A DNA stretch of 64,000 nucleotides from Octopus sinensis (lineage: Eukaryota), in the NCBI RefSeq assembly GCF_006345805.1, contig NC_043007.1:19530001-19594000 (forward strand), written 5' to 3'. The notes under the pieces are model-generated. The model saw only the letters and a program-made list of their open reading frames with translations. It was not told where the DNA came from and made no database searches. A program made the position numbers and the translations under genes. Positions 17,690 to 64,000 of this stretch are shown in pieces (position 1 is the stretch's first letter; each line of letters starts with the position of its first letter).

Positions 17690-18300
17690 TAATTCACAGA
17701 CATCGTCTTGGTTTATGTTTTCTTACATCAAATTCCGAAATAATTGTAGCCTCCACCATCTGAAAATTTTTTTCCTCTGCCTTTAACCCTCCAACGCGAA
17801 GTCTAGGCCACTTATAGTTGAATTCCAAGTCGCATAATCTTTGGCTTCTATACTTATACTCTGCCATGAATGTCCCCCTTTTTCCAGTTCCTTCAGTGTT
17901 GATCTCCGCCACGAGTTCACGCCTACCTTTCTTCTATATCCAACCGGTTTCCACTTTAAAGCACTTTTCGCTACATTTGCTGTGTCTTTTCTAATTGTGC
18001 TACCAATCCACTTCCACTTTTTCTTAAATAGTTGCTCCCTAATCGAAACGTGATTTGTTCTTTGCCATAGCTCCATATTGCTTATGTGTTCAGGCCATCT
18101 AATTCTAAGTATACTACGCAAGCATCTGTTGATGAATGATTGTATTTGCTTATTTGACTCAACTGTTGTTCGCCTTGTCTCAGCCCCATACAATAACACT
18201 GCTTTTAACGTTAGTGTTAAAAATTCTTATTTCGTTCTTTATTGAAATTACTCTTTCACTCCATACTTTCTTTAACAGTATTTCTTTAAATGTATTTGTT
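17690..18300 (-). mobile_element. RTE-type LINE ORF2 3' fragment
   Basis: LLYGAET...FINRCLRSILRIRWPEHISNMELWQRT...KKWKWIG..IRK is the typical RTE post-RT region. Confidence 0.88.
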
Positions 18301-46900: not shown

Positions 46901-49900
46901 GTCAAATCATCCAACCCATGCTAGCATGGAAAGTGGACGTTAAACAATGATAATGATGATGACGACTAACTTCAGCACTTGACATTTTTATAGAGAACCT
47001 ATTTCTCATCACCAGTCACTATTTGATCCCCCCAAAATGTTCATTTGTGAGATGTGACAGCAAAGAACACACATTCACTTTCCGCACATGATTAGACTCA
47101 GAAAGTTTGTGAGGAAGCCATTGACCCAATTTGTTGACATTTTCAATGGCACACAGATGTCGATGAATGGTTGAATGACCAAATCCAAGCTTCTCTGCTT
47201 GTTCCTCAACAGTTACGATAGGATTTTGTTCCCAGGGTTTGCAGGACATCCTCATCAAGTTCTACAGATCTTCTAGGCTGTAGTTTCCGGCTCAGAATTT
47301 CTGGAACTACCATTGACACTGGCTTACACTTATTGTCCGTTCCCCATATACTGCATTAATATTCCTCGCACTTTCCATTGCTTTGTTTCCTTTCTGAATA
47401 TGCTGAATATGCTCCTTTGTCACTTCCATTATAGCTTTGAAAAAATAACTATTAAAATCGAACTGCACTCTTCAAAACTTGCACTAAGAATAAGCACAAG
47501 ATACACTTATTACTTGCTTTTATAGCAAGTTGATGCAGGTAGTTTATCTCGTCCCCCTCCGACTTTTAGTTCATGTCGTTGGAAAAACCGTATTATTTAT
47601 GGGACGACCCAATATGTGTATGTGGGTAGGCCCTCTCTCTCTCTCTCTCTCAGTTTGACTGTCTCTCTATCTTTCTCTTTGACTTTCCCTCATCTTCCTC
47701 TCCTTCCTTGCCCTACTAAGGTAGCCAAGTGTCTCCTCTTAGAGGAAAACAACTCTCTGTCCCTCTTTCCTATTCTAACCTCATGCCTGGCACATGGTTA
47801 CTTCTGTCAGTTCCACCCCCTCTCGCAGCTGAGAAGTCTTTGTGTTCTAAGCTGGTACTGGTGCCATGCAAAAAGCACCCAGTACACTCTGTACAGTGGC
47901 TGGTGTTAGGAAGCGGCATCCAGAGACCATACCGAAGCAGACAACGGAACCTGGTGTGGTCCCTGGCCTTGCCAGCTTCTGTCAAACCATCCAACTCAGG
48001 TCAGCATGGAAAATGGACATTAAATGATGTATTTCAATAAGGAGGGAAGACAGTTTCCCTCAGCCTTTACGGGCCCTTCAAGGATGGTAAAAGGTGGTGG
48101 GGGAAGAGAATATCTTCAAACTAGAAACTTGACCTGACTGTTTGCGAATGAGTAAACTTTGCTAAAGGCACTGAAAATGGCAGGCGTTGGAGGCTGAATT
48201 TGAAGACATTATGCCTGTCACCAAAGATGATGAGAATAGCTTTGATGATGGTTTTGGTTATGAATATTTAATATCCAATGATTATATTGAGTATAGTTGC
48301 AAAAAGTGTGTGACCATCAAGCTTTTGCTTCTCCCCCCACACTTTAATTTCTTTTCCCTTTTTTTGCTTTGTTTATTCTTAAGTTCTTCAGATTTTTCTT
48401 GCATATTTAATTTTCTTCTTCTCTTCTATTTCAGACCGTTACGACAAGCAGCCACCATATTGCTACAGCTAACTGAAGAATTTAAACCACTCCTTGGTGA
48501 CACTGGTCCCGTCTTCAACTACATTCCAATCAACGAACTGGGGCTGCCTCCACCCACCCCGAGCCTCCTCACCCACCAAATGGTTGACATCATTCCATTT
48601 CCTTCATATTTCCCCCAGCTCTATGACTGCCTCTGTCACCTCAAACAGATTGACTTCGAAATTGAACAGCTACAACTGTCCAATGACAAAACCACCGCCG
48701 AAAGATGCAAGCTGGTCAAAGTACTGGCACGAGAGAAAGTGGCCATTCTCCAGGCATTCTTGCAAAAGTACGATGTGGTCCTTGGCCAAGAAGGAGTTGA
48801 TCTTCTATTGCCTTATGTTGAAGAACTTCTTCAGAACAATGAGACAGCGGTGCAAGCTGCCTGGACCCTGTTTGACATCATGTCTTGCCAACTTGGTCCC
48901 GAAGTTGCTAAGAAGAAATTCCTTCCTCAAATAGTGAAACTTTATGCTGAAGAATTTTCTACCCCAAAGCATATCAAATTGCACCACCACAAATTCCTTG
49001 TACAGTTGCTGGTGCGTTTCCAGCTTCAGACATTCCTTGAAAATTTTTCAACACTTCTTGTAGAGGCAGTGGCCGGTTATAAAGACTTTGTCATAGAAAC
49101 TGACTCAGATCTTCCCGAAGTCGTTGAGTTCCACCGTCAGAAATCAGATTTCTCCCGTAAAGTACGCAATCCGATCCCGGCATGTCCGGAAGAGGTCAGC
49201 GAAGAGTGTAGCAACAGTGCCGAGACGTTGACAGGGGAGGAAACGCTCCTGGACGTCCCAGCAGGGTTGGAAACTGATGAAGACGCAGAAGAATATGAAG
49301 ATTTTGATGAGAATGTGTTGCTTGGAGTTGATGAGAAAATGGGTAGCGAAAGGGGATCTGACACAGCAAGCATTGGCCGTGACTCCCTGAAGAGTGATGA
49401 CATTCCGTACAAGCAGCCATTGCTTGGCATGGATGATGATGACACCAATTCTCTATTCCAAAACGGTCGACGTTTCTCCTTCCCAGTATCCATACACGAC
49501 CGGTCCAACCGGCGGGACCGTAGCCATAGCAACAGCCGTGTTTGCAGCCGGATCAGTGACAGGGACATGGACGAACAGCTGTCTGCTTCTGAAGACAACG
49601 CTAGCGACCTTTCTCCTCAGCTGAAATTGTCGCAGTCCGAAGAAGACGAGGAAGACGACCGCGTCAGCGTAAACGCAGGCAGTCACAACAGCAACAACAA
49701 CAACAACAATAATATCAATGGCAGTAACGAGTACGATAACGATGTCGTTATAGGCGGTGACGAACACGATTACGTCGGCAGCAAAACCGAAGTCTACCAA
49801 GGAGCTCGTCGGTCGTCATCGCAGAAGGACGATTCCCCAGCATCGAGCAGCGGGGACAGATCGAGCGACATGTGCACATCGCTGCCAAGCAGCCAGGTCC

Positions 49901-50544: not shown

Positions 50545-53500
50545 TATTATTATTATCATAATTATTTATTAAGGTGGCGAGCTGGCAGAATCGTTAGCAT
50601 GCCAGGCAAAATGCTTAGCAGCATTTTGTCCGTCTTTACGTTCTGAGTTCAAATTCCACTGAGGTTGACTTTGCCTTTCATCCTTTCAGGGTCGATAAAT
50701 TAAGTACCAGTTGCACACTGGGGTTGATCTAATTGACTAGAACCCCTCCCCAAAACTTTCAGGCCTTGTGCCTAGAGTAGAAAAGAATATATTTACTATC
50801 TACGTCTGTACGTTCTGAGTTCAAATTCCACCGAGGTCGACTTTGCTCTTCATCCTTTTAGGGTCGATAAATTCAGTACCAGTTACGTACTGAGGTCGAT
50901 CTAATTGACAGCCCTCCCCCCTCCAAAAATTTCAGGCCTTGTGCCTAGAGTAGAAAACAATATATTTAGTATCTGCATTTTTGTGTTCTGATTTCAAATT
51001 CCACCAAGGTCGACTATGCCTTTCATCCTTTTGAGGTCAATAAATTAAGTACCAGTTACGTACTGGGGTCGATCTAATCGACTGGCCCCCTCTCCAGAAA
51101 TTTCGGGCCTTGTGCCTAGAGTTTGAAAAGAATATATTTACTATCTGCATCTTTATGTTCTGAGTTCGAATTACACCGAGGTCGACTTTGCCTTTCATCC
51201 TTTTGGGGTCGATAAATTAAGTACCAGTTATGTACTGGGGTCGATCTAATCGACTGGCCCCCTCTCCAGAAATTTCGGGCCTTGTGCCTAGAGTTTGAAA
51301 AGAATATATTTACTATCTGCATCTTTATGTTCTGAGTTCGAATTACACCGAGGTCGACTTTGCCTTTCATCCTTTCAGATTCGATAAATTAAGTACCAGT
51401 TGCGTACTGGGGTCGATCTAATCGACTGGCCCTCTCTCCAAAAATTCGTGCCTAGAGTAGAAAAGAATATCGATTATATCACATGCTAATACTGATACAA
51501 GACACTCTATCTTCTAACTTCTATATTTTCCAGCTACAAACTGCCGCAAGTCCAGCCAGTTGGTCAACGGAGATGTCTCTGCCGTCAAGGTGCTGGACTG
51601 TCTCTCATTTATGGCCCTGTTGTATGGTGAACAGGTCATACTCTTGCAGTACTTCCCAGCCATGGAGGACATGGTGAGTGACCCCAGTTACCCCACTAAT
51701 CAGTACACTGACCATCAAACAGTTTCTTCTAAAATTTACCCCAGCTCATCTCTGCTTGCTGCTTTTTCCTTTTTTAACACTTCTGTGGTTCTGTTGCTAG
51801 GTAACAGCTGCTGAGAAAGAGATGAGCCAAGCAGCAGAGGCAGGGCTGATCGCCTCATTGGTACTCATGCGACACATGGTTCCACTGCTCTCTGAGAAAA
51901 CCCTGATGGACCTTCTCCAGGTAAATATTGCCCACTTCTAATTGGTTTGTCAAGGTGTGTTCATAAATATGTGAGCTGTTGAGTGAATGAATACGGGTAA
52001 AGTGTGAGTCTGTGGGTGGCACAGGGGTAGTTATATGTACATGAAGGGTAGGGTACATTTTGTGTGATAACCGGCTTCCGTGCCAGTGGTACATAAAAGG
52101 CACCATTCGAATATGATCATTACCAGTGTCACCTTACTGGCACTTATGCCCATGCTAGTAGGGTGTCAAGAGCACCATCTGAGCATGATAGTTGCCAGAG
52201 CAGCTAACGGGCTTCTGTGCTGGTGGCTTGTGAAAGGCACCATTTGAGCGTGATCGTTACCAGCGTCACCTTACTGGCACGTGTGCCGGTGGAATGTGTA
52301 AAAAGATTCGAGCGAGGTTGTTGCCAGTACTGCCTGACTGGCCCCCATGCCGGTGGCACGTAAAAAGCACCCACTACACTCTCAGAGTGGTTGATGTTAG
52401 GAAAGGCATCAAGCTGTAGAAAGTCTGCCTGCTGCAGCCATCTGGTTCACCAGCCCTCAGTCAAAATCGTCCAACCCATGCAAGCATGGAAAGCGGACGT
52501 TAAACGATGATGATGATGATGATGTGTGGGTTAGGAGTAGGGAACTCTATGGATTACGAGGTGTGGATGTAAATAAGTGCCTGAATTCTAATGAGATTGA
52601 GTTTGGGTTATTCTGTCAGGCAGTTGTCTTCTACTATAGCTTCAGATCAACCAAAGCCTTTTTAGTGGATCTGGAAGATGGAAACTGAATGAAAAAAGTT
52701 GTGTGTATGTGTGTGTGTGTATTTATGTATGCGAATGTATGTTTGTATGTCTGTGTCACCTTGTTTCCACATAGCATGATAATTGTAAATGAGAGTCACT
52801 GTCGTCTAAGCAGTGTCATTAATTCCTAATATTCTGTGAAAATGTGTCCAGCCGTGGAAAGTTATTATCTTGCTTGGAAACAGGTGAGGTTTGATGACAG
52901 GAAAGGCATCCAGCCTTGGAAATTCTGCTTCAGTAAACTTCATCCAATCCATGCAGTACGGAAAACTGGACATTGAAGCAGTATTGATGATGCTGATTTC
53001 ATCATCATCATCATCATCATCATTTGATGTCTGTTGTCGATGCTGGCATGGGTTGGACAGTTTGACCGAGGGCTAGCAAGCGGGAAGGCTGCACCAGACT
53101 CCTGTCTGATTTGGCATCGTTTTCTATGGCTGGATGCCCTTCCTAATGCTAACCACTCCAAGAGTGGCACATAAAATACTCCAAGTGTTTTATGTGCCAC
53201 CGGTACAGGTGCCATTTGCGTGACACTGGTATCTGTCTTGACTATGATTTTGCTCAGCTTGATGGGTCTTTTTCTCAAGCACCACACCATGCCACGATTT
53301 ATGCATATCTATGTACATCATGTCTTCTTTTCTCTTTGCCCAGGATCTGAAGGTGCACAAAATACTACATTCTGTGATGCAACTTACTGCACTGCCCATC
53401 TGCTTCCCAAGTGGGACGCACGCACGCAGCCTCATTCTGCACAAAGTGGTGGATGTGCTCTACATTGTCGGGGTGAGAATTGGCTTTGAGATGACCAGGA

Positions 53501-53791: not shown

Positions 53792-56406
53792 AGCATTGTG
53801 TGTAACTATTACTCCAGACAGGCTTTTTTTCTGTTTCCATTTTTGTTACCTCTCTCCATCTGTTTTCTATTCTTGTACTTCCCTGAAGAAGAGCATAGGC
53901 TCGAAATGTCAGATTCCTTAATTTTTCCTGAGTGTCAAACTAATGCACCTTGTTCGTTGTTACCACCTGTCTCTGTTTTTGTACAATTTTCAGTCATGTA
54001 TGTACATACATATGTACATATATACGTATGTATATATGCATATACATGCATACATATGTATGTATGTATGTATGTATGTATGAATATATCACCGTGACCG
54101 ACCAGGCTATCAGATGTTGCTACACATCACTGGTCACAATGTTTTAGCCTTCATGTGATGCCACCCCGCTGGCTAAGCGAGCAGGCCGACAGAAGAAAGA
54201 GTGAGAGAATGTTGTGGTGAAAGAGTACAGCAGGGATCGCCACCACCCCCTGCCAGAGCCTCGTGGAGCTTTTAGCGGTTTTCAGTCAATAAACATTCAA
54301 CGCTCAGTCTGGGAATCGAAACCTCGATCCTACAACCACAAGTCCGCTGCCCTAACCACTGGGCCATTGCATCTCCACATGTATGAATATATATGTATCT
54401 TTTACTTGTATTCATTATAGACTGTGGCTTTAGTAGAAGGCACTTACCCAAGGTGTCATGCAGTGGAACTGAACATGGAGCCATGTGGTTGGCAAGCAAC
54501 CTTCTTACCACACTGCCATGTGTTTGGTTAAGAAGCTTGGTTTACAACCACTTCATTGTAGCTTTGGTCTTAGGAAACTTGCATCTAATGGATTGAGTAC
54601 CAGACATTCAGCTAAAATATTACTCTTTCCAGTCTTGTTCATAACATGCACTTTCCATGCTGGCATGGGTGGGACGGTTTGACAGGAACCGGCCAGGCAG
54701 GAGCCTGCACCAGACTTCTGTTACTGTTTTGGTAGGATTTTTACAGCTGGATGCCCTTCCTATCACCAACCACTCAGCAGAGTGGACTTTGTGCTTTTTA
54801 TGTGGCACAAGCACAGACGAGGCCAGTTTTGGCAAGGATTTTACAGCTAGAAACCCTTCCAAATGCCAACCCCTTCACAGTGTGGACTGGGTGTTTTTCG
54901 TATGTTTGAATTAGAAGCTTAAACTGTGAATAGGTACAGAGTTTGCTTACTTCTGTGGGAAAATCAAACTCAAGAGGAAGGTAAAACCAAACTATGTCTG
55001 TAACATGTGAGAAACACCTTACTTAGATGTTTTGCAGAGCCACCAAAAGTTAAGTTGTGTTATAAAGTTAAGCTCTTTATATTAGGGTGTATACTGATGT
55101 ATTAGTGTGTGTCTTCTATACTCTTATGTTGTGTCATGTATTTACAGGTGAAGATTCTGAGGAACTGTATTGGAAGATCAAGATTGATGCCAACACTGAA
55201 GAATATAAAATTGGTTCCCCAGTCAACATCCATGAACTGCATCGGTCGTCACCAACGACAGCAGCAACACCAACATCACAGGCATTCCGTCTGTTGAAGT
55301 CCCGCTGCAAGAGAGCAGGGAGCTCGACCAGCATCACATCGTTGACCAAGAGTAATCTCAGTGGTGGGTACCAGTTAATGTTGTTGTTGTTGTTCATCAT
55401 CATCATCATCATCATCATCGTTTAACGTCCGTTCTCCATGCTGGCATGGGTTTGACGGTTCGACCGGGGTCTGGGAAGCCAGGAGGCTGCACCAGGCTCC
55501 AGTCTGATCTGGCAGTGTTTCTACAGCTGGATGCCCTTCCTAACGCCAACCACTCCGTGAGTGTAGTGGGTGCTTTTTACGTGCCACCCGCACAGGTGCC
55601 AGGCGAGGCTGGCAACAGCCGTGATCGGTTGGTGCTTTTTACGTGCCACCGGCACATGGGCCAGAGGAGGCTGGCAACAGTCACGATCGGTTGGTGTTTC
55701 ATTACGTGCCACCGGCACGAAAGCCAGTCAAGGTGGCGCTGGCATCGGCCACGTTCGGATGGTGCTTTTTACGTGCCACCGGCACAGGGATCACAACTAC
55801 AACTTCCATTGATTTTTGATGTTGATGTACTTGACTCAATAGGTCTCCTCAAGCACAGGGTTGAAATGGTGTTTCTTTACTTGCTACCTGCATAGGAGTC
55901 AGTCCAGCGGCACTGGCAACGGCTGGGTGCCAGTCATAGGATTTGGTTCAATTTCGATTTGTTATTAATAATAATAATAATGATAATTATAATACAGTGA
56001 ACTGGTAGAATCGTTAGCACACTCATCAAAATGATTAATGGCATTTTGTCTTCCTTTATGTTCTAGGTTCAAATTCCACCGAGGTTGACTTTGCTTTCGA
56101 CCTTCCATGGTCGATGAAATAAATACCAGTCTATCTCCCTTCCTCTCTCCTGAACTTGCTGGCTTTGTGCCAAAATTTGAAACCATTCGATCAGCTGACA
56201 GAATCGTTAGTACGCTGGTCAAAATGCATTTCATCTGTCTCCACATTCTGGGTTCTAATTACGCTGAGGTCAACTTTGCCTTTCAATCTTTCGGGGTCAA
56301 TAAATTAAATACTAGTGAAACACTGGAGTCGATCTAATTGTCTAGTCCCCTCCCCCAAAATTTCAGGCCTTGTGCCTATTATAGAAAGAATTATTATTAT
56401 TATTAT

Positions 56407-56476: not shown

Positions 56477-57828
56477 TCAAAAACTGTCAGTTAATCATTT
56501 GCATTTTCAGTTTTGATTAATTTTTTTTCTGTTTATTTCTTTTTTCTTCCCCTCATTTACCAGACTATAGCATCAGCCCTCTGCCGATGAACAATACCAT
56601 TGACAAACAGCCAGAACACGTAAAGCAGGAAATGAAGAATGTTTTCTCACCAGAGTTGGCTCATGCAGCATATATTCCTCTGTGCCAAATCTTTGGCAGG
56701 TGAGTAGAGTCCAGGTGTACAGATCTGCTTTAACCCTTTCGTTACTGTATTTCTGTTAAGATGCTCTGTGTTTCTTCCGATTAATTTTAAATATTACAAA
56801 GAATTTAGTAAAATAACTTGGTTCTCATTAAGTTAGTGTTAGGAACATAAACTGTGATTAAGGTTTGGTGGAAGATTTTAATTTAGAACTTTTGAAAACA
56901 AGACGTTTGTACTACAGAGCCAGAGGCAGTTTCAGGCAGGTTGGTATCAAAAGGGTTAAATTAATCATTTGCTAATCCTCTTGTTACCATATTTTTGTTG
57001 GGATGTTCTGTGTTTCTTTCAATTAATTTTAAATATAACCAAGAATTTAGTAAAATAACTTAGTTATCATTAAGCTTGTGTTAGGAACATAAATTGTGAC
57101 TAAGGTTTGGTGGAAGATGTTAATTCAAAAACAAGACATTTGTACCGTTCTATATTTAAGAGATGAGGAATTATGTACATTATTTAAATTATTTGCATTT
57201 GATGGATATTTGTCCTCATCTTGTTTGTTGTTAACACAACATTTCAGCTGATATACCCTCCAGCCTTCATCAGGCATATAGCATAGTGGTTAAGAGCACG
57301 GGTTACTAACACCAAGATTCCGAGTTCAATTCCAGGCCATGACCTGAATCATCATCATCATCATCATCATTTAACGTCCGCTTTCCATGCTAGCATGGGT
57401 TGGACGGTTCAACTGGGGTCTGGGGAGCCCGAAGGCTGCACCAGGCCAGTCAGATCTGGCAGTGTTTCTACAGCTGGATGCCCTTCCTAACGCCAACCAC
57501 TCCGAGAGTGTAGTGGGTGATTTTATGTGCCACCGACACAGGTGCCAGACGAGGCTGGCGAACGGCCACGCTCGGATGGTGTTTTTATGTGCCACCGACA
57601 CAGGTGCCAGACGAGGCTGGCGAACGACCACGCTCGGATGGTGTTTTTATGTGCCACCGACACAGGTGCCAGACGAGGCTGACGAACGGCCACGATCGGA
57701 TGGTGTTTGTTACGTGCCCACAGCACGGAGGCCAGTCGATGCGGTACTGGCTACGGCCACGTTCAGATGGTTTTCTTGTGTGCCACCGGCACTGGTACCA
57801 CAAAGATACAAATTCCATTGATGTTCAA

Positions 57829-57859
<31 letters not shown>

Positions 57860-60800
57860 AATAAAATTGAAAAATACCTTAGAAATGTAAACCCAGGTTT
57901 GAAATTTCCCCAAGACACCTGATGAAGGCTGAAGGGTGTATCAGCCGAAATGTGTTAACAACAAACAAGATGAGGACAAATATCCATCAAATGTAAACAA
58001 TGTAAATAAAGATATTTGTATTATAGAGCCAGAGGCAGTTTCAGCCAGGCTGGTATCAAAAGGGTTAATATGTGTAAATTGTCAAATATGTGAACCATGG
58101 GTTGTCTTGTGTAGGTTGCTATCAAAAGAGTTAATCCCTTACTATTCATCTCACTCTTGTATTCTTGGTTTCTCATCACACCCAACCAGCATCCACATGG
58201 AACAGTCACTCTGGAATGATGATCTCATTCGACAGCTCTGCAGCCAATATGACAGCACCCTCGACAAATTACCATCATCAGCGCTAAGTGAGTCCTTTGA
58301 TTCCTCCATTGAAGGTAAGCATGCTAACCATTCAACCACACAACCATCTCAAACTATTTCAAGTAATTAGCGAAGCATAACCAACCACTGTATTTATTCC
58401 GATGCAATAAGATCTCAAATATTACGAAATTCATATTTTTTGTACATGAAAATCAACGATAAATTCTTTTACTTGTTTCAATCATTTGACTGTGGCCATG
58501 CTGGAGCACAGCCTTTAGTCAAACAAATCAACTCCAGGACTTATACTTTGTAAGCTTAGTAGTTATTCTATCGGTCCCTTTTGACAAACCGCTAAGTTAT
58601 GGGGATGTAAACACACCTACATCGGATACATCTTATGGTGTTTCTACCTATGCCTTTTCTACAGATTGAGCAGGACTATCTGTCTGAAGGGATTTGTGAT
58701 TTGTCTGCTCTCCTACTTACTGAGACTTTGGATTTTGCTAGGTTAACTCTAAGGCCATTTGATTCTAGACCTTGCTTCCATATCTGAAATTTCTTCTCTA
58801 GTTCTGGTAGTGATTTGGCTATAAGAACAATGTCATCAGCATAGAGGAGCTCCTGGGGCAGCCCATCTTAAATTCCTCTGTTATTGTCTGGAGGACTATA
58901 TTGAACAAGAGGGGACTGATCCTTGGTGAACGCCTATATCTACCCTAAATTCATTGCTATATTTATTGCTAACCTTCATCTTACTGACAGCATCCCTGTA
59001 CATGGCTTGAATAGCTCTCACCAATCACTCATCTCTCCTTAGCTTCCACATTGACCAAGATAAGGGAACAGGGAACTCTGTCAAAGGCTTTGCCCATGTT
59101 GACAAAAGCCAGGTACAGACTAGATATTTCTCCTGCAGTTGCCTAACCTGGAATATATAGCATCAGTCATGCTCCTGCTTAGCACAAATCTGAACTGCAT
59201 CTCATCTACACATATATTTATTTATTTATATACTTGTTTCAGTTATTTGATTGCAGCCTAAAAAACCACAGATCTTGTTTATACAGCCACTCATAGTTTC
59301 CTGCTCAAAATAATTTATTCTGCCCTTTATCAAGCTTGAAAACAAGACTGTTTGTATGTTGTCTTTTGAGCAGATAACTTTTAAACAAGAGACGCTTGTA
59401 AAGAAGAAAAGAAGAAAAACACAAAGGAAATAACCAATGTGTACATCACAGACACACAAATACATACATGCAGACATACATATATATATATATATATACG
59501 CACACACACACACACATGTATAGACCCAGCAACTAAAGTGAGATGGGATCCATGCCCAATGCCAGTGTTGCATGTCCGGCCCATTTAAGAATACCCCTGA
59601 TGCGTCGGGTGATATGATATGTTTGAGAAGACCTGTTGAGTCAAGTAAAACCAATATCATAGCTGTGGCCAGTGCCCCCTGACTGGCTCCCGTTCCGGTG
59701 GCACATAAAATGCACCATCTGAGAATGGTTGATGCCAGTGCCTTTGACTGGCCCACATGTCGGTAGTACATAAAAAGCACGTGGTCGATGCCAGGCCTGC
59801 CTGACTGGCTCCTGTGCTGGTGGCACGCAAAATGCACCCACTACACTCTTGGAGTGGTTGGCGTTAGGAAGGGCATTCATTTTGACCCAGGTGTTTTGCA
59901 ACAGTAGAGTTTATATGCCAAGAGAATGTGGCAGTCCTATAAAGGACGATATTACTGTTGTTTTAGCCCCAGGAAAACATCTTTTCCAGCTGGTTATCGA
60001 TACACAGTTTGTATAGGAGGAATGTAGGGTCCCAGACAGACCCACCACTCCTTGCCATACACTGTAGTCTCATACTGCAGCCATACACTCTGCTAGGGCT
60101 CTTCCCAGACTAATCTCTGATGTTACAAACAGCGAATAAGTTGGGCTTTTTTTTATTTAATTGCTGTTTTTTTCTTTTTACAGGTGTGACCCCTGACCTT
60201 GAGACACCAAGTGACTCTAGAACCAGTAAGTCTATTCTCAGTCTTTCTCTCTCTCTCTCACACACACACACATACACTCTATCATCATCATCATCATCAC
60301 CATCATCGTTTAACACCTGCTTTCCATGCTAGCATGGGTTGGACGGTTTGACCGGGGTCTGGGAAGCCAAGAGGCTGCACCAGGCTCCAGTCTGATCTGG
60401 CAGTGTTTCTACAGGTGGATGCCCTTCCTAACAGAAGGGAGATGAGGATGATGTTGGTGGTGGTGGTGATAGTGGTGGTGGTGGTGGCCGTTGTGGTGAT
60501 AGTCATAATTATCCCATTCCCATGCAAGGATGTTTTACAAGAAACAACTGACCCCAGTATGCAACTGGTACTGGATTTTATTGACCTCTCCAGAAAGAGA
60601 TGATGAAGGATTGGGTGAGGATGAAGGCATGTATGCTCATCATCATCATCATCATCATTAATATTATTCTCTTCTCACCTCTTCCTCCTTTTCTTCTCCC
60701 CTCCTCCTCTTCTCTCCTACTCCTCTCCTCCCCTTCTCTCCTCCTCTTCTCTCTCCTACTCCTCCCTCTCCTAACCCCCCTCTTCTCTCCTCCTTTTCCA

Positions 60801-62082
60801 CTTGTGTATCTCTTTCTTCGTTTTCTCTCCTCCTCCCACTACCACTGAAAGCGCTACAAATTCCTTTACCTTTACTTCTACCTCTTCCAATGACAGTCGA
60901 AAGCTTACTGGCCAAGACCGAAGACCCCGGGCCCCATGGTGGGATTGGCAGCAACGTCGCAGTAGTTGGCAACCGGATAGAACTTCAGCAGCAACTGGGC
61001 AGTGGACATCCAGAGGTGCCCGCAGTGAGTCCAGGCTACAAACACACCGGAATCCTGCATATTGGACAGGAGGATCTCAAAAAGTAAGTGACACCGTAAC
61101 ATTGAGTGCAGCTGCACACTACCACCCCATGCACACACACTCACTCACACATACACATTAACACACTCATTAAGATGCTTACAGTAAAGGACATAAGTAT
61201 AATATCATCATCATCATCGTTTAACGTCCGCTTTCCATGCTAGCATGGGTTGGACTATTTGACTGAGGACTGGCGAACCAGATGGCTGCACCAGGCTCCA
61301 ATCTTGATCTGGCAGTGTTTCTACAGCTGGATGCCCGTCCTAACGCCAACCACTCTGAGAGTGTAGTGGGTGCTTTTCTGTGCCACCGGCACAGGGCCAG
61401 TCAGACGGTACTGGCAACGACCTCGCTTGAATGTTTTTACACATGTCACCAGCACAGGTGCCAGTAAGGCAATGCTGGTAACGATCACGCTCGGATGGTG
61501 CCTTTTATGTTCCACTGGCACGGAGGCCTGATAGCCGCTCTGGCAATGATCACGCTCGGATGGTGCTCTTAGCACCCTACTAGCATGGGGCACAAGTGCC
61601 AGTAAGGCGACGCTGGTAATGATCACACTCGAATGGTACCTTTTAAGTGCTACTGGCACTGAAGCCGGTTAGCCGCTCAGTCAATGATCACACTCATATG
61701 GTGCTCTTTGCACCCTGCTAGCACGGACGCCAGTCATCGAAAAATAATATTAACAGAAAAATAACACCGGCAACATACTTTAGGAATGAGAACACAAAGC
61801 ATTTTGCCCAGCTTGCTGATGATTCTGATAGTTTGTGGCCCTGATACACACACATATATATATTCTTTTCTACTCTAGGCATAAGACCTGAAAGTTTTGG
61901 GGAGTGAGCGGGGTGCAGTCGATTAGATCGGCTCCAGTGCGTAACTGGTACTTAATTTATCAACACTGAAAAGATGAAAGGCAAAGCCGACCTCGACGGA
62001 ATTTGAACTCAGAACATAAAGACAGACAAAATACTGCTAAGCATTTCACCCGGCATGCTAATATTTCTGCCAGCTCACTGCC

Positions 62083-62124
<42 letters not shown>

Positions 62125-63313
62125 TAATATGGTTTTGTGTTCTTATTTTCAGCCCTGAAATGGAGGTGAACAACCAACGCCACCTACGAGGCAACTGGCT
62201 GGCCTACTGGGAACATGAACTGGGTAAGTATACTTCTGTTTAAATAAGAATTAGCTTAGAGAAATAACTGAGAGTGGCCAATGGCTTGTATTTGAACACC
62301 ATAAACAAATACAGGTGTATCAAATTCCATACAACATGAATTCTTGGTTTATTAAAATTACCTCTACCTCTAGAGGATGTGTATGAAGGTACACTAAGAC
62401 CAACATGTGTGAAGATACACTCTGTGAAACCACCTGGCAAGCAATGCCTTGATGTCACTCTGACATGACACCCAGATAAAGCTGAAGAGTTCACCTGGTT
62501 ACTAAGAGGATGTTTTCCCTTACAAACCTACTAGGCAGGTTAAACAAAGGGAAATTACTATGTAATTGACCGTTAGTAAGACAAAAGAGCTTTTAGAATG
62601 ACCATTAAGTAAGGGGAAAAAACTGAAGGTACACGTACATGGGTGTGTATGCACGCACGTGTATGTATGTACATGTGTGCATGTGCGATTGCTATGAGAA
62701 TTTTTACTTCCTTCCCTTCGGTTTTTTTCCCCTTATTTAACGGTCATTCTAATAGTTCTTTTGTCTTAATAACGGTTAATTACATAATAATTTCCCTTTG
62801 TTTAACGGTCATTTTCAAAGCATATTTTGATTGCCTCGATAACTGACGAGATGCCGGAGCAGGTTTCCGCCCCGACATCCGAAACTCGGAGTCTTATTAT
62901 GGCAACCGAATAATTGTCACACACACACACATATATATATATATATACAAAATAAGAAAATGGAGAAACACATCTTAATCAATGATCAGCTACCAGATAA
63001 TACCCAATCACATAATTTATTAAACCACTACATATGAACATTAAGGTCAAACATAATAATATAGAACAAAACAATGTACATGAAAGAGTACTTTTGATAC
63101 AATAAGTACAGTATGTATAAGTGAATATAAATAAATACAAATATAAATATACACTACATCTTACAGCTGTTTCAGCCATGCAGATATGGGTGCCTCATTA
63201 TGCTCATAACTTTGTTGGGTGCTTCACTAGCAGTATATTGGATATATGTTATCCCATGGAGGGTTGCACTTACAACCCCTATCTCAATTTGTATATATAT
63301 ATATATATATATG

Positions 63314-63383
<70 letters not shown>

Positions 63384-63533
63384 ATATATAAATCTAGATT
63401 ACATAGATAGTCATTCAGACCCGTTTGTATTGTATTCCCTAACATTTTCATTTGTTGATATCTCCCTGTACAGGGCTCAGTGACCGAACAGCAGCCTTCA
63501 ACTTCAAACACATCAAACTGCAAACTTTCTTGG
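21121..63533 (+). CDS. WDR81: WD repeat-containing protein 81 (BEACH + WD40), spliced CDS, 3' end beyond window: join(21121-21213,36725-36909,37606-37759,39224-40438,40978-41139,42557-42600,44489-44651,45758-45936,48435-50128,51534-51673,51801-51920,53344-53677,55148-55363,56564-56699,58190-58314,60184-60225,60897-61083,62153-62223,63474-63533)
   Basis: Translated exons follow recalled human WDR81 in order: [105 protein letters not shown]. All introns are GT..AG and cumulative phases match at all 18 junctions. Confidence 0.95.
24768..25262 (-). mobile_element. Tc1/mariner transposase 3' fragment with terminus
   Basis: [10 protein letters not shown]...[17 protein letters not shown] are the second and third catalytic-motif regions; terminus lies in a TA run. 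Confidence 0.88.
25883..25940 (+). ncRNA. Type-I hammerhead ribozyme fold (sense, WDR81 intron 1)
   Basis: GGGGT / CTGATGA / CCATAAAGA-TAC-TCTTTATGG hairpin / GAAAC-CCAGG-GTA / ACTCT; manual fold only. Confidence 0.55.
26811..27195 (+). mobile_element. Family A SINE
   Basis: Full-length match to 3879-4285. Confidence 0.85.
27500..28212 (+). mobile_element. 5'-truncated RTE LINE: ORF2 C-terminus, 3'UTR and (GAT)n tail
   Basis: [10 protein letters not shown]...[17 protein letters not shown]...DRDLWR runs directly into the GTTAGGAAGGGCATCCAGCTGTAG...GTTAAACGATGATG repeat. This shows that the abundant repeat is an RTE 3' end. Confidence 0.82.
30476..30840 (+). mobile_element. Family A SINE
   Basis: Matches 3879-4285. 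Confidence 0.85.
31050..31470. repeat. (CAC/CAA)n cryptic repeat with 99-bp higher-order period
   Basis: CTGCTAACAACAACAACACTATCACAGC at 31081, 31180 and 31279. Confidence 0.9.
32317..32540 (+). mobile_element. Family B SINE
   Basis: Matches family B. Confidence 0.85.
33213..33597 (+). mobile_element. RTE-like LINE 3' end
   Basis: [17 protein letters not shown]...[10 protein letters not shown]...[13 protein letters not shown] then stop and (TGA)n tail. Confidence 0.82.
35126..35161 (+). ncRNA. Minimal type-I hammerhead-like motif in a PLE-type terminus
   Basis: CTTT / CTGAGGA-A / GAGC-GTAG-GCTC / GAAAC-GTT / AAAG; element is flanked by (TA)n on both sides. Confidence 0.5.
35865..36430 (-). 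mobile_element. L1/Tx1-like LINE 3' fragment
   Basis: Minus-strand [15 protein letters not shown]...[10 protein letters not shown], recalled as a Tx1-type ORF2 C-terminus; tail resembles the family B SINE tail. Confidence 0.5.
36725..36909 (+). CDS. WDR81: WDR81 coding exon 2
   Basis: Acceptor TTTCAG|GTG; VSKEWLKNL...[11 protein letters not shown] resembles human VPARWLASL...RLPAGWTRVEV; donor GA|GTAAGT, phase 2. Confidence 0.88.
37606..37759 (+). CDS. WDR81: WDR81 coding exon 3
   Basis: Acceptor ACCAG|T completes GA|T (Asp); [10 protein letters not shown] resembles human QNYRNLWRHA; donor AAG|GTAAGT, phase 0 (alternative donor after 37745). Confidence 0.8.
39224..40438 (+). CDS. WDR81: WDR81 coding exon 4 (polyQ tract, kinase-like segment, most of BEACH domain)
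   Basis: 415-aa ORF with BEACH hallmarks ([47 protein letters not shown]); donor AAG|GTCAGT at 40439; acceptor CAG at 39221-39223 (alternative AG ends at 39230). Confidence 0.95.
40506..40770 (+). mobile_element. Helitron 5' fragment just downstream of WDR81 exon 4
   Basis: Homologous to 10729-10980. Confidence 0.7.
40978..41139 (+). CDS. WDR81: WDR81 coding exon 5 (end of BEACH domain)
   Basis: TTCAG|CTG ... CAG|GTAACA; 162 nt, phase 0-0; [39 protein letters not shown]. Not in the ORF track because it has no start codon. Confidence 0.95.
41164..41570. repeat. ~32-bp minisatellite (CTGACCTCTGACCTCCAACACTGCTTGACTCC), about 12 degenerate units
   Basis: Directly visible in WDR81 intron 5. Confidence 0.9.
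41886..42107. mobile_element. piggyBac-type MITE
   Basis: TTAA|CCCTTTCG ... CGAAAGGG|TTAA. Confidence 0.85.
42139..42359. mobile_element. piggyBac-type MITE (second copy of a tandem pair)
   Basis: TTAA|CC ... CGAAAGGG|TTAA; homologous to 41886-42107. Confidence 0.85.
42557..42600 (+). CDS. WDR81: WDR81 coding exon 6 (44-nt exon)
   Basis: (CT)n tract then TTGTAG|GTT; donor AG|GTGAGT; phase 0 to 2 is exactly what is needed to bridge exons 5 and 7. Confidence 0.75.
43808..44002. mobile_element. piggyBac-type MITE (second family, degenerate)
   Basis: TTAA|CCTTTA ... TAAATGG|TTAA. Confidence 0.55.
44150..44404 (-). mobile_element. Young tRNA-derived SINE
   Basis: Reverse complement of 4736-4990 with few differences. 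Confidence 0.85.
44489..44651 (+). CDS. WDR81: WDR81 coding exon 7
   Basis: CTCAG|T, phase 2; [17 protein letters not shown] resembles human ILLPEGFNPMQALEELE; donor CAG|GTAAGT. Confidence 0.85.
45758..45936 (+). CDS. WDR81: WDR81 coding exon 8
   Basis: TTTCAG|GTG; [14 protein letters not shown] resembles human RDMQALGVLLAEMV; donor AG|GTAAGA, phase 2. Confidence 0.92.
46017..47612 (-). mobile_element. Degenerate mariner element
   Basis: TA|TTGGGTC(A/G)TCC..TAAATAAT TIRs at both ends; [10 protein letters not shown] (WVPHEL motif) and [10 protein letters not shown] (YSPDLAP motif); RTE 3'UTR inserted at ~46797-46962. Confidence 0.88.
48435..50128 (+). CDS. WDR81: WDR81 coding exon 9 (helical region plus acidic linker)
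   Basis: TTTCAG|A, phase 2; [54 protein letters not shown]; donor A|GTGAGT at 50129, phase 1. Confidence 0.95.
50574..51470 (+). repeat. Tandem array derived from family B SINE (one head plus ~5 body units, ~160-172 bp period)
   Basis: TACTGGGGTCGATCTAATCGACTGGCCC recurs at 51061 and 51233 and near 51404. Confidence 0.88.
51534..51673 (+). CDS. WDR81: WDR81 coding exon 10
   Basis: TTTTCCAG|CT, phase 1; [27 protein letters not shown]; donor ATG|GTGAGT. Confidence 0.93.
51801..51920 (+). CDS. WDR81: WDR81 coding exon 11
   Basis: CTAG|GTA ... CAG|GTAAAT; 120 nt; [10 protein letters not shown]...[10 protein letters not shown] resembles human EAGLLAAVTL...LSDTTLMDIL. Confidence 0.92.
52075..52525 (+). 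mobile_element. RTE 3'UTR fragment with internal tandem units
   Basis: Ends GTTAAACGATGATGATG. Confidence 0.8.
53000..53240 (-). mobile_element. RTE 3'UTR fragment (antisense)
   Basis: (CAT)n then GCTGGCATGGGTTGGAC..GGATGCCCTTCCTAA. Confidence 0.75.
53344..53677 (+). CDS. WDR81: WDR81 coding exon 12
   Basis: CCCAG|GAT; [11 protein letters not shown]...[11 protein letters not shown] resembles human FPSGAQARTIL...RIGQEMVQQHL; donor A|GTGAGT, phase 1. Confidence 0.93.
53883..53910 (+). ncRNA. Partly decayed minimal hammerhead-like motif
   Basis: CTGAAGA-A / GAGC-ATAG-GCTC / GAAAT-GTC; stem I is weak. Confidence 0.35.
54087..54380 (-). mobile_element. tRNA-derived SINE (family F here)
   Basis: Minus-strand TGGCCCAGTGG / GGTTTCGATTCCC; tail CCTGGTCGGTCACGGTGAT also seen at ~8560; partial copy at ~38000-38180. 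Confidence 0.75.
55148..55363 (+). CDS. WDR81: WDR81 coding exon 13 (Ser/Thr-rich linker)
   Basis: TTTACAG|GT, phase 1; open frame; donor chosen as G|GTGGGT (phase 1) to match exon 14. The 3' boundary is less certain. Confidence 0.7.
55395..55860 (-). mobile_element. RTE 3'UTR fragment (antisense) with tandem units
   Basis: Reverse match to 27829-28210. Confidence 0.82.
56564..56699 (+). CDS. WDR81: WDR81 coding exon 14
   Basis: Long pyrimidine tract then CCAG|AC; [23 protein letters not shown] resembles human [23 protein letters not shown]; donor AG|GTGAGT. Confidence 0.92.
56734..56955. mobile_element. piggyBac-type MITE
   Basis: TTAA|CCCTTTCG ... AAAAGGG|TTAA. Confidence 0.85.
57146..58008 (+). 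mobile_element. tRNA-headed element with PLE-type hammerhead-like tail and an inverted tail copy
   Basis: A box 57279-57289, B box 57322-57333; tail 57866-58008 is mirrored by 57190-57274; TSD AAGA(C/T)ATTTGTA(C/T). Confidence 0.6.
57348..57826 (-). mobile_element. RTE 3'UTR fragment inserted into the tRNA/PLE element
   Basis: (ATC)n tail; three ~62-bp internal units. Confidence 0.82.
58190..58314 (+). CDS. WDR81: WDR81 coding exon 15
   Basis: ACCAG|C, phase 2; [14 protein letters not shown] resembles human IPNHELVGELAALY; donor G|GTAAGC at 58315 (alternative in-frame donor at 58288). Confidence 0.82.
58680..59150 (-). pseudogene. RTE LINE reverse-transcriptase fragment (frameshifted)
   Basis: [16 protein letters not shown] ... 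[10 protein letters not shown] ... [12 protein letters not shown]. Confidence 0.88.
59590..59876 (+). mobile_element. RTE 3'UTR fragment, 3' truncated
   Basis: Matches 27800-28070; stops at GTTAGGAAGGGCAT. Confidence 0.75.
60184..60225 (+). CDS. WDR81: WDR81 coding exon 16 (42 nt)
   Basis: T-rich tract TTTTTACAG|GT; donor A|GTAAGT; phase 1-1. Confidence 0.72.
60897..61083 (+). CDS. WDR81: WDR81 coding exon 17
   Basis: Long CT tract, GACAG|TC, phase 1; [15 protein letters not shown] resembles human GTFGSVLVGNRIQ; donor AA|GTAAGT, phase 2. Confidence 0.9.
61203..61740 (-). mobile_element. RTE 3'UTR fragment (antisense) with multiple tandem units
   Basis: Reverse match to 52075-52525. Confidence 0.82.
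62153..62223 (+). CDS. WDR81: WDR81 coding exon 18
   Basis: TTTTCAG|C; [14 protein letters not shown] resembles human GLSGNWLAYWQYEI; donor G|GTAAGT. Confidence 0.93.
62838..62898 (+). ncRNA. Type-I hammerhead ribozyme fold with intact core (sense, WDR81 intron 18)
   Basis: GATAA / CTGACGA / G-ATG..CAT-CC / GAAA-CTC-G-GAG-TC / TTATT; canonical GUC triplet; manual fold only. Confidence 0.65.
63474..63533 (+). CDS. WDR81: WDR81 coding exon 19 (entry to WD40 region)
   Basis: TACAG|GG; [20 protein letters not shown] resembles human [20 protein letters not shown]; donor G|GTAAGT. Confidence 0.9.
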
Positions 63534-64000
63534 GTAAGTCTTTATACCCCACCACTTTCTCTCTCTCGTCTCTCCCACCCCATCCGCATAACTATGTATA
63601 GTCTTCCATATCAATCATTCAAAATATGCATACATCTGTTTTTGCATGTATTTCAGTTATTCTTGTACAATTAACTTCGCAGCCTCTGTTAAGTTTAATG
63701 GCTGGAAGTTATTTCACAAAAATAGTAGAATTCACTCTTCTACACTCTTCCCTCTTCTGTAATATTCCTATGGCTTCTTCATTTAGTAGCAATAGTCTTT
63801 TTGAAGCCCTTCAGTCTATTGTGCTATGCTTTTTCTTGATGAGAATGCTGACTTAGAATCAGTGAATTCTTTGAAATGCAAAGTATTCCCAATATATTTA
63901 CACATTTAAGAAACAATACAGCCTCGTCCAAGTATGTCTGGTACCTAAAGGACACATAGTTCACCACTTTGAAAATGTAATAGTCTATTCTTGGTTTTCC

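What the first reader, a model, noticed from the sequence alone, without database searches (positions are those of the whole stretch)
62838..62898. Apparently intact hammerhead ribozyme, sense to WDR81 pre-mRNA (intron 18)
Seen: stem I GATAA(62838-42) pairs with TTATT(62894-98). The core CTGACGA (62843-49) and GAAA (62881-84) is complete. Stem II is imperfect but long (G-ATG..CGG / CCG..CAT-C, one bulge). Stem III is ACTC-G-GAGT, and the cleavage triplet is GUC (cut after 62893). Established: type-I hammerheads with short palindromic stem III occur in Penelope-like elements and retrozymes and may need to dimerise. Inference: this copy could cut the nascent WDR81 intron co-transcriptionally, just before the WD40 exons.
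Basis: partly seen in the sequence, partly recalled or inferred. Interest (0 to 1): 0.78.

Follow-up and report, generated by a model that had tools for sequence, protein, structure and literature searches.

The report
Lone transposon-type hammerhead in WDR81 intron
The sequence really does carry a complete type I hammerhead ribozyme motif in an intron of a mollusc WDR81 gene, but it looks like an ordinary solitary copy of the kind that retrotransposons scatter through invertebrate genomes, and it is built so that one copy alone probably cuts poorly.

Summary
At 62826-62910 (+) there is a full type I hammerhead: core CUGACGA and GAAA, G10.1-C11.1, GUC cleavage triplet (cut after 62893), a three-segment helix I, a long imperfect helix II and a quasi-palindromic helix III (ACUC-G-GAGU). 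Rfam Hammerhead_1 scores it 22.1 bits, below the gathering score of 34. Two independent nulls give about 2e-4 chance matches of this quality per window, but 6-9 per 2.5-Gb genome. It lies about 0.6 kb into an intron of a WDR81 orthologue, in sense, just ahead of the WD40-coding exons; "intron 18" could not be verified. The motif is the 3' part of a 379-nt unit: a 268-nt palindrome, then the hammerhead, abutting a (CA)n(TA)n microsatellite. This unit is not CpG-depleted (o/e 1.25 against 0.48 for the intron), so it looks like a fairly young insertion. This matches published Penelope-like-element and retrozyme hammerheads. Helix III is unstable as a hairpin. The active-compatible monomer fold is 6.4 kcal/mol above the MFE. 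There is no second copy in the window. Efficient co-transcriptional cutting of WDR81 pre-mRNA is therefore unlikely, though untested. No related genomic copies could be retrieved, so family membership remains inferred. It is a new member of a known kind and of low interest.

The parts
62826..62910 (+). Complete type I hammerhead domain, closed by the three-segment helix I
   Evidence: Rfam Hammerhead_1 at 22.1 bits over 62837-62902. Constrained fold with all three helices.
62838..62842 (+). Helix I, inner 5' strand GAUAA. It pairs with UUAUU at 62894-62898. Outer segments: 62831-35 with 62901-05, and 62826-29 with 62907-10.
   Evidence: Direct reading and the pair list.
62843..62849 (+). Core box C3-U4-G5-A6-C7-G8-A9 (CUGACGA)
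   Evidence: It matches the Rfam consensus CUGAcGA.
62850..62880 (+). Helix II, 31 nt, long and imperfect. G10.1 (62850) pairs with C11.1 (62880). C62879 is bulged, and there are two internal mismatches.
62881..62884 (+). Core G12-A13-A14 plus A15.1 (GAAA)
62884..62892 (+). Helix III quasi-palindrome ACUC-G-GAGU. As a hairpin it is 3 bp plus a triloop; between two copies it is a 4+4-bp duplex.
   Evidence: hairpin 0.0 kcal/mol, homoduplex -9.7 kcal/mol.
62893..62894 (+). Predicted scissile bond: C17 (62893) | U1.1 (62894), GUC triplet
   Evidence: Position in the Rfam alignment. Cleavage itself was not tested.
62539..62806 (.). 268-nt palindrome immediately upstream: 84-nt arms, 92% complementary, 100-nt TG/CA-rich centre. 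Probably part of the same inserted unit.
   Evidence: (I1). It folds as a separate long hairpin. CpG o/e is 1.0 against 0.48 for the intron.
62791..62820 (+). 30-nt subrepeat, 83% identical to 62726-62755. It crosses the palindrome's right edge toward the hammerhead and so links the two.
   Evidence: D14.
62918..62950 (.). (CA)n(TA)n microsatellite, 12 nt after the hammerhead domain
   Evidence: PLEs show a bias for inserting into such repeats (PMC8557442).
62153..62224 (+). Last visible WDR81 exon. The intron donor GTAAGT is at 62225.

Best explanation
This is a solitary copy of a retrotransposon-borne type I hammerhead, of the Penelope-like-element pseudo-LTR or non-LTR retrozyme kind. It is the 3' part of a roughly 380-nt non-autonomous unit (long hairpin plus ribozyme) that inserted fairly recently next to a (CA)n(TA)n microsatellite. 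The insertion site is an intron of a mollusc WDR81 gene, and the orientation happens to be sense. In the parent element, the ribozyme's job is to cut multimeric or tandem element transcripts. Two copies pair through their quasi-palindromic helix III to form a 'double hammerhead', and the core then catalyses attack of the 2'-OH of C17 on the adjacent phosphate. Here it is transcribed passively within the WDR81 pre-mRNA. With no partner copy nearby, an unstable helix III and a competing inactive fold, it probably cleaves slowly or not at all and has little effect on WDR81. Shown: the motif, its statistics, the gene context, the unit's anatomy and its CpG status. Inferred: transposon origin, dimer dependence and low activity.
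For: The core and all three helices are complete, and the Rfam Hammerhead_1 alignment runs end to end. The chance expectation is about 2e-4 per window by two independent estimates. Architecture matches the published PLE and metazoan class: G10.1-C11.1 is present, helix II is large, the first segment of helix I is 5 bp, helix III is small and quasi-palindromic, and most copies in such genomes are solitary (PMC4209133). The hammerhead lies at the 3' end of the unit, next to a (CA)n(TA)n repeat and an inverted repeat, as described for PLEs (PMC8557442). The unit is 379 nt, 38% GC and highly self-paired, like the 350-390-bp mussel retrozymes; mussel carries about 5000 hammerheads (PMC7229834). The unit holds 17 of the 23 CpGs in the visible intron, with o/e 1.25 against 0.48, which indicates a young insertion. 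The same helix III (ACUC-G-GAGU) occurs in a textbook type I hammerhead on an unrelated, eukaryote-like metagenome contig, L004. For dimer dependence: the helix III hairpin is 0.0 kcal/mol against -9.7 for the duplex; the monomer's active-compatible fold is 6.4 kcal/mol above the MFE; the double-hammerhead dimer (-51.3) is about level with two monomer MFEs (-50.2). Intronic monomers are common: about 44% of Xenopus retrozyme-related sequences overlap introns (bioRxiv 10.64898/2026.07.22.740005).
Against: No second copy of the unit or the ribozyme was found in the window. No homologous copy was found in the viral, metagenome or prokaryote-genome collections, and the source genome was not available. 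The defining property of these families, many copies with covarying helices, is therefore untested. No PLE reverse-transcriptase or GIY-YIG ORF is nearby. The score is below Rfam's gathering threshold. The unit lacks the unpaired nucleotide between A9 and 10.1 that is typical of PLE min-hammerheads. The inverted repeat does not have the canonical PLE head-to-head form, because the left arm lacks a ribozyme. The thermodynamic argument ignores tertiary contacts and co-transcriptional folding, so real activity could be higher than predicted.
Confidence: 0.72

Rival explanations
1. Chance look-alike: an intronic sequence that happens to satisfy the hammerhead descriptor and has no ribozyme ancestry.
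For: The score of 22.1 bits is below Rfam's gathering score of 34. Both nulls predict about 6-9 equally good chance motifs per 2.5-Gb genome. Core letters alone occur at the chance rate. Another core-letter look-alike in the same window, at 25.8 kb, proved spurious. No related copies could be shown.
Against: The per-window expectation is about 2e-4. The motif sits in a CpG-rich, GC-richer island with anatomy typical of an insertion: hairpin, microsatellite junction and a subrepeat crossing the boundary. Helix I continues for 9 further base pairs beyond the descriptor. Real hammerheads number in the thousands in some mollusc genomes (PMC7229834), so true copies should far outnumber chance ones.
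Confidence: 0.1
2. One reading: a catalytically competent copy that cuts the nascent WDR81 intron co-transcriptionally and so affects production of WD40-containing mRNA. It could be selected for this, like the intronic CPEB3 ribozyme, or merely tolerated.
For: The core is intact, the orientation is sense and the position is about 0.6 kb into the intron. CpGs are retained, so there is no obvious decay. There is precedent that an intronic self-cleaving ribozyme can modulate its host mRNA (PMC10919898). A 3-bp helix III with a triloop could in principle close in cis. Transcripts of other genomic copies could supply a partner in trans.
Against: The helix III hairpin is predicted to be unstable, and an inactive fold that sequesters CUGA is favoured by 6.4 kcal/mol. 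There is no tandem partner. Single PLE min-hammerheads gave no detectable cleavage, and dimers cleaved only weakly in vitro (PMC4209133). From my own recollection, not checked here: Dye, Gromak and Proudfoot 2006 (Mol Cell 21:849) reported that cutting an intron with a hammerhead need not block splicing. Conservation in other species could not be tested.
Confidence: 0.12
3. The 379-nt unit is a DNA-type foldback or MITE-like element (palindrome bounded by TTAA-like ends) and has no relation to PLEs or retrozymes. The hammerhead would then be either incidental to the element or a separate older insertion next to it.
For: The palindrome has 92% complementary 84-nt arms, and its ends read ..G|TTAAAC...GTTTAA|C. 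The left arm has no ribozyme partner. There is no RT ORF nearby.
Against: A 30-nt subrepeat of the arm (62791-62820) extends past the palindrome's edge toward the ribozyme (D14). Both parts are equally free of CpG depletion. No clear target-site duplication was found. Hairpin-rich units carrying hammerheads are what retrozymes look like (PMC7229834).
Confidence: 0.06

Closest known systems
Hammerheads of Penelope-like elements (min-HHRs and variants with a small palindromic helix III; Cervera & de la Pena 2014, PMC4209133)
   Same: Type I topology. G10.1-C11.1 is present. Helix II is enlarged and carries a bulge. The first segment of helix I is short, at 5 bp. Helix III is tiny and quasi-palindromic, implying dimeric action. 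The copy is solitary and dispersed. It sits next to a microsatellite and an inverted repeat, as described for PLE insertions (PMC8557442).
   Different: No PLE ORF or second pseudo-LTR is in reach. There is no unpaired nucleotide between A9 and 10.1. Helix III has an odd central G (a 1-nt 'loop') rather than an even palindrome. Family membership could not be shown by multiple copies.
Metazoan non-LTR retrozymes (Cervera & de la Pena 2020, PMC7229834), e.g. the mussel 350-390-bp repeats
   Same: Mollusc host. Type I hammerhead. The unit is about 380 nt, low in GC (38%) and strongly self-paired. The ribozyme domain folds apart from the rod.
   Different: Retrozymes are defined by tandem repeats that release circular RNA. 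Here there is a single unit and a single cleavage site, so no circle can be excised. The hairpin arms are far more perfect (92%) than a typical retrozyme rod.
Classical dimer-dependent satellite hammerheads (newt satellite 2, Schistosoma Sm-alpha; Forster et al. 1988 'double hammerhead', as summarised in PMC4209133 and PMC7229834)
   Same: A weak helix III prevents monomer activity. Pairing of two copies is predicted to restore an extended helix III.
   Different: Those sit in long tandem arrays or SINE-like elements with polymerase III features. No tandem array and no tRNA-like signal was found here.
Conserved intronic self-cleaving ribozymes (HH9/HH10 hammerheads of amniotes, de la Pena & Garcia-Robles 2010; the CPEB3 HDV-like ribozyme, PMC10919898)
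   Same: A self-cleaving motif in sense orientation inside an intron of a protein-coding gene.
   Different: Those are conserved at orthologous positions across species and fold stably as monomers. This copy looks like a young insertion with a monomer-unstable helix III, and its conservation could not be tested.

Membership tests
Hammerhead ribozyme, type I (Rfam RF00163) | Catalytic core: C3 U4 G5 A6 N7 G8 A9, G12 A13 A14, the A15.1-U16.1 pair, and H17 (not G) | tested here: met
   CUGACGA at 62843-49, GAAA at 62881-84, U62892, C62893.
Hammerhead ribozyme, type I (Rfam RF00163) | Three helices around the core, with helix I open-ended and helices II and III closed | tested here: met
   The covariance-model alignment covers model positions 1-45. 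All helices form in the constrained fold. Helix III is only 3 bp as a hairpin.
Hammerhead ribozyme, type I (Rfam RF00163) | Score at or above Rfam's curated gathering threshold (34 bits) | tested here: not met
   22.1 bits. No hit at gathering over the whole window.
Hammerhead ribozyme, type I (Rfam RF00163) | Mg2+-dependent site-specific self-cleavage | not testable with these tools
   Needs in vitro transcription and a cleavage assay.
PLE-associated hammerheads (Cervera & de la Pena 2014) | Located in a pseudo-LTR flanking an RT/GIY-YIG ORF; most genomic copies are solo remnants | tested here: inconclusive
   No PLE-like ORF in 61.8-64 kb. The window ends 1.1 kb downstream. Solo copies are the norm, so absence does not decide the question.
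PLE-associated hammerheads (Cervera & de la Pena 2014) | Belongs to a multi-copy consensus family within the genome, with covariation in the helices | not testable with these tools
   The source genome was not available. There was no copy in the window and none in the public collections scanned.
PLE-associated hammerheads (Cervera & de la Pena 2014) | Unpaired nucleotide between A9 and 10.1 | tested here: not met
   G62850 follows A62849 directly and pairs with C62880. The irregularity is instead a bulged C62879 on the 3' strand.
PLE-associated hammerheads (Cervera & de la Pena 2014) | Conserved G10.1-C11.1, larger-than-usual helix II, helix I of 4-5 bp | tested here: met
   G62850-C62880. Helix II spans 31 nt with about 9-11 pairs. 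The first segment of helix I is 5 bp.
PLE-associated hammerheads (Cervera & de la Pena 2014) | Small palindromic helix III / loop 3 that allows a dimeric active form | tested here: met
   ACUCGGAGU is self-complementary except for the central G. The homoduplex is -9.7 kcal/mol against 0.0 for the hairpin. The palindrome is imperfect because its length is odd.
Non-LTR retrozymes (Cervera & de la Pena 2020) | Tandem repeats (two or more units), each carrying a hammerhead, so that a unit-length RNA is excised | tested here: not met
   Single unit and single hammerhead. No other copy in 64 kb.
Non-LTR retrozymes (Cervera & de la Pena 2020) | Unit of about 170-400 nt, GC below 45%, highly self-paired | tested here: met
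   379 nt, GC 0.38. MFE -174.7 kcal/mol with a long hairpin.
Non-LTR retrozymes (Cervera & de la Pena 2020) | Expressed as circular RNA | not testable with these tools
   No transcriptome data available.
Conserved intronic ribozymes (HH9/HH10-like) | Conservation at the orthologous intron position across species | not testable with these tools
   The closest available WDR81 relatives are at most 64% identical in the BEACH exon, so the introns cannot be compared.

The most novel reading that the evidence does not exclude
The solitary hammerhead has been co-opted by its host. Slow, possibly partner- or factor-dependent, co-transcriptional cleavage 0.6 kb into this intron would compete with splicing and tune how much full-length, WD40-containing WDR81 mRNA is made. 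That would be an invertebrate counterpart of the CPEB3 and HH9 intronic ribozymes, here arising from a recent transposon insertion.
Probability: 0.04. Interest if true: 0.6.

Novelty: new member of a known kind. Interest (0 to 1): 0.2.

Why it matters
If the best explanation is right, this matters only as annotation. It is one more transposon-derived hammerhead copy of a class already known to occur in thousands of copies in invertebrate genomes and often in introns. It gives a worked example of how such a copy looks when solitary: a hairpin-plus-ribozyme unit, a microsatellite junction and undepleted CpGs. It also shows that such copies can fall below Rfam's threshold and be lost to the speed filters. 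It would gain importance only if the copy cleaves in vivo and affects WDR81, or if the 379-nt unit turns out to define an undescribed non-autonomous element family in this mollusc.

Tried and rejected
1. Rfam at gathering threshold over the whole window gave nothing. A 4-kb E-value scan also missed the motif, because the filters dropped it. Only the 116-nt scan showed Hammerhead_1.
2. A core-letter pattern search gave 6 hits against 4.0 expected, so it is uninformative on its own.
3. The pair at 25814-25869(-) and 25888-25935(+) looked like hammerheads, with a similar ACCC-A-GGGU helix III. Their helix II is separated from the core by an internal loop, they get no Rfam hammerhead hit in a narrow scan, and they are the two arms of a palindrome. 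I rejected them.
4. Self-BLAST of 62450-63000 and of the separate parts found no second copy in the window; all other hits were microsatellite.
5. Public scans were mostly empty. The family-specific pattern against viral contigs gave 0. The core plus this helix III gave 0 in viral contigs, 7 in metagenomes and 2 in prokaryote genomes. Only L004 forms helices I and II, and it shares nothing beyond the core and helix III.
6. I abandoned comparison of orthologous introns, because the nearest WDR81 relatives are at most 64% identical.
7. No PLE coding remnants were found in 61.8-64 kb.
8. No tRNA-like or SINE signal was found.
9. A full-text search for the motif's sequence strings returned only unrelated siRNA and primer papers.
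10. tblastn's extension of the last exon to 62321 is spurious because it contains stop codons. The exon ends at 62224.

Full report
**What is in the sequence**

- Helix I: GAUAA (62838-42) pairs with UUAUU (62894-98).
- Core: CUGACGA (62843-49) and GAAA (62881-84).
- Cleavage site: U16.1 at 62892 and C17 at 62893, giving a GUC triplet with the scissile bond between 62893 and 62894.
- Helix II (62850-62880): the conserved G10.1-C11.1 pair (G62850-C62880), then a bulged C62879, AUG/CAU, a C.A mismatch, CGG/CCG, an A.C mismatch and GC/GC. That is one bulge and two mismatches.
- Helix III: ACUC-G-GAGU. A 1-nt loop cannot close, so a monomer can form only 3 bp with a CGG triloop. Two copies can form a 4+4-bp duplex with a central G.G.

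UUGCC (62831-35) pairs with GGCAA (62901-05) after a 2x2 internal loop. UUUG (62826-29) pairs with CGAA (62907-10) after an A.C mismatch. The whole domain is therefore 62826-62910.

**Is it more than chance?**

Rfam finds nothing at gathering thresholds in the window. A 4-kb permissive scan also missed the motif, because the filters dropped it. Restricted to 116 nt, Hammerhead_1 (RF00163) aligns over its full length at 22.1 bits, E=0.0017, against a gathering score of 34.

The core letters alone occur at the chance rate: 6 found against 4.0 expected. I wrote a descriptor requiring the core, a 10.1/11.1 pair plus at least 3 bp in helix II, at least 3 bp in helix III, H17, and at least 5 bp in helix I.
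- It hits only this site in the window.
- It hits once in 50 Mb of order-2 Markov sequence.
- It hits 35 times in 2.36 Gb of random sequence with the window's base composition.
- Only 3 random hits in those 2.36 Gb had helices as stable as the candidate (constrained energy of -15.3 kcal/mol or lower), which is 1.3e-9 per base.
- The covariance-model E-value, converted to a single family, gives 1.7e-9 per base.

Both estimates mean about 2e-4 expected per 64-kb window (both strands), but about 6-9 per 2.5-Gb genome. The motif is highly non-random for this window, but its quality alone cannot prove ribozyme ancestry at genome scale.

**Gene context**

The ORF at 39272-40519 carries a BEACH domain (Pfam E=4e-36). 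Its homologues, where a source names them, are called WD repeat-containing protein 81. The nearest named relative is a 2152-aa protein of the land snail Bradybaena similaris, so the window is most likely molluscan.

That protein maps colinearly onto the + strand from 36.7 kb to 62.2 kb in about 12 blocks. The last real exon is 62153-62224, with acceptor cag| and donor |gtaagt at 62225. The tblastn extension beyond it contains stop codons. It aligns to about aa 1816-1840, and the snail protein's WD40 propeller spans aa 1855-2150.

The label 'intron 18' could not be verified.

**What the motif is embedded in**

Immediately upstream lies a 268-nt palindrome (62539-62806) with 84-nt arms that are 92% complementary and a 100-nt TG/CA-rich centre. 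A 30-nt subrepeat of its right arm (62726-62755) recurs at 62791-62820, crossing the palindrome's edge toward the ribozyme (D14). Twelve nucleotides after the hammerhead domain, a (CA)n(TA)n microsatellite begins (62918-62950).

Folded as one RNA, the palindrome forms its own long hairpin and the hammerhead domain folds separately.

The window is CpG-depleted (o/e 0.59), and the visible intron more so (0.48). The 379-nt stretch 62539-62917 has o/e 1.25 and contains 17 of the intron's 23 CpGs. The hammerhead domain alone has 8 CpGs in 85 nt, which puts it in the top 2% of such windows. This marks palindrome plus ribozyme as one comparatively young insertion.

Nothing else in the window resembles it. 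There is no tRNA-like signal and no reverse-transcriptase or GIY-YIG ORF within 61.8-64 kb.

**Comparison with what is known**

Cervera and de la Pena (PMC4209133) describe metazoan hammerheads of Penelope-like elements as follows:
- they are type I motifs;
- G10.1-C11.1 is conserved;
- helix II is larger than usual and may carry a bulge;
- helix I is 4-5 bp;
- helix III is minimal or small and palindromic, implying dimeric action;
- most genomic copies are solitary remnants;
- a single motif showed no detectable cleavage in vitro, and dimers cleaved only weakly.

Craig et al. (PMC8557442) place the hammerhead near the 3' end, in the pseudo-LTR. They also report insertion bias toward (TA)n and (CA)n microsatellites and frequent adjacent inverted truncated copies.

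Cervera and de la Pena 2020 (PMC7229834) report about 5000 type I hammerheads in mussel, within 350-390-bp, low-GC, highly self-paired retrozyme units.

A 2026 preprint (10.64898/2026.07.22.740005) derives animal retrozymes from PLE pseudo-LTRs. It finds dispersed monomers, with about 44% of Xenopus retrozyme-related sequences overlapping introns.

The present locus fits this picture in size, composition, self-pairing, ribozyme position, microsatellite junction and helix architecture. It differs in four ways:
- it lacks the extra nucleotide between A9 and 10.1;
- its helix III quasi-palindrome has odd length;
- it is a single unit, so no circle can be excised;
- its inverted repeat has a left arm with no ribozyme.

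**Related sequences elsewhere**

A family-specific pattern found nothing in viral contigs. The core plus this exact helix III (CGAAACTCGGAGTC) gave 0 viral, 7 metagenome and 2 prokaryote-genome matches, which is roughly the number I estimated from chance.

Only one, L004 (contig OMLO01038264.1), forms helices I and II: GCAG/CUGC, GUGC-GUAA-GCAC and ACUC-G-GAGU. It lies on a microsatellite-rich, eukaryote-like contig, inside a hairpin whose other arm carries GAAACUCAGAGUC.

This shows that the 4-bp helix III with a 1-nt centre occurs in at least one well-formed natural hammerhead, with the central base varying between the two arms. L004 is not a homologue of the present unit, so the decisive test could not be run. 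That test is many copies with a conserved core and covarying helices in the source genome.

**How it most likely works**

Mechanistically (established for hammerheads), the folded core positions the 2'-OH of C17 to attack the adjacent phosphate. This leaves a 2',3'-cyclic phosphate and a 5'-OH.

For this copy, nearest-neighbour modelling gives the following:
- Helix III has no stability as a hairpin (0.0 kcal/mol) but -9.7 kcal/mol as a duplex between two copies.
- The monomer MFE (-25.1) pairs the core's CUGA with UCGG of helix III.
- The best fold with a free core is 6.4 kcal/mol higher, about 6e-5 of the modelled ensemble.
- A domain-swapped double hammerhead (-51.3) is about as stable as two separate monomers (-50.2) and only 4.8 kcal/mol above the dimer MFE.

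These energies ignore tertiary contacts and folding during transcription. They agree, however, with the published behaviour of this class.

With no partner copy in 62.8 kb upstream or 1.1 kb downstream, I infer that the copy is transcribed passively within the WDR81 pre-mRNA and cleaves slowly, if at all.

An intronic ribozyme can influence its host gene when its rate is matched to transcription and splicing, as shown for CPEB3 (PMC10919898). Engineered hammerheads can cleave co-transcriptionally in vivo (PMC2288634). From my own recollection, not checked here, Dye et al. 2006 showed that intron cleavage need not prevent splicing. A regulatory effect here is possible but would require activity that the architecture does not favour.

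**Verdict**

The functional inference is weak. The most likely account is an ordinary, fairly young, solitary transposon-derived hammerhead copy (confidence about 0.7). The rivals are a chance look-alike (about 0.1), a copy that really cuts the host intron (about 0.1) and an unrelated foldback element (about 0.06). This is a new member of a known kind, and interest is low.

Noticed in passing
window 25799-25958: A roughly 160-nt palindrome (80% self-complementary). Each arm carries CTGATGA...GAAAC plus an ACCC-A-GGGT quasi-palindrome, mimicking a hammerhead with the same 4-bp, 1-nt-centre helix III. Helix II is not contiguous with the core, and Rfam gives no hammerhead hit. It could be a decayed inverted pair of hammerheads or pure coincidence.
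   Followed up: partly
window, e.g. 27816-28158(-), 35312-35460(-), 36449-36590(-), 42894-43034(-), 46801-46919(-), 53048-53166(+), 54665-54816(+), 55446-55895(+), 57395-57822(+), 59795-59876(-), 60334-60432(+), 61245-61567(+): A very abundant interspersed repeat: at least 14 copies in 64 kb, at 76-96% identity, with internal subrepeats of about 62 nt. It produces spurious ORFs such as '...[12 protein letters not shown]...'. It is probably a SINE-like family of this genome, and most copies lie in WDR81 introns.
   Followed up: partly
window 17783-18199(-) and 33171-33584(+): Two ORF fragments that look like C-terminal parts of a LINE-type reverse-transcriptase protein. Pfam gave no hit, so the identification rests on my recollection of such sequences.
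   Followed up: no
L004 (OMLO01038264.1) 1065-1167: A well-formed type I hammerhead (- strand, 1091-1139) inside a hairpin. The opposite arm repeats the 3' half (GAAACUCAGAGUC plus the helix I strand). Rfam scores it 30.2 bits as Hammerhead_3, below the gathering score. The contig is microsatellite-rich and looks eukaryotic.
   Followed up: partly
window 61452-61726 and 60293-60432 / 61204-61344: A 138-nt tandem duplication (84% identity), and a pair of roughly 140-nt direct repeats 911 nt apart (84-95% identity), in the introns upstream of the finding. They probably belong to the abundant interspersed repeat.
   Followed up: no
window 62153-62224: The last visible WDR81 exon is only 72 nt (acceptor cag|, donor |gtaagt). 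tblastn over-extended it to 62321 through stop codons. A weak tblastn hit at 63473-63535 (E=0.057) overlaps the same residues and is probably spurious.
   Followed up: yes
whole window: Microsatellite load is extreme: (CA)n, (TA)n, (CT)n, trinucleotide runs and compound repeats. Overall CpG is depleted (o/e 0.59), which fits a methylated invertebrate gene body.
   Followed up: no
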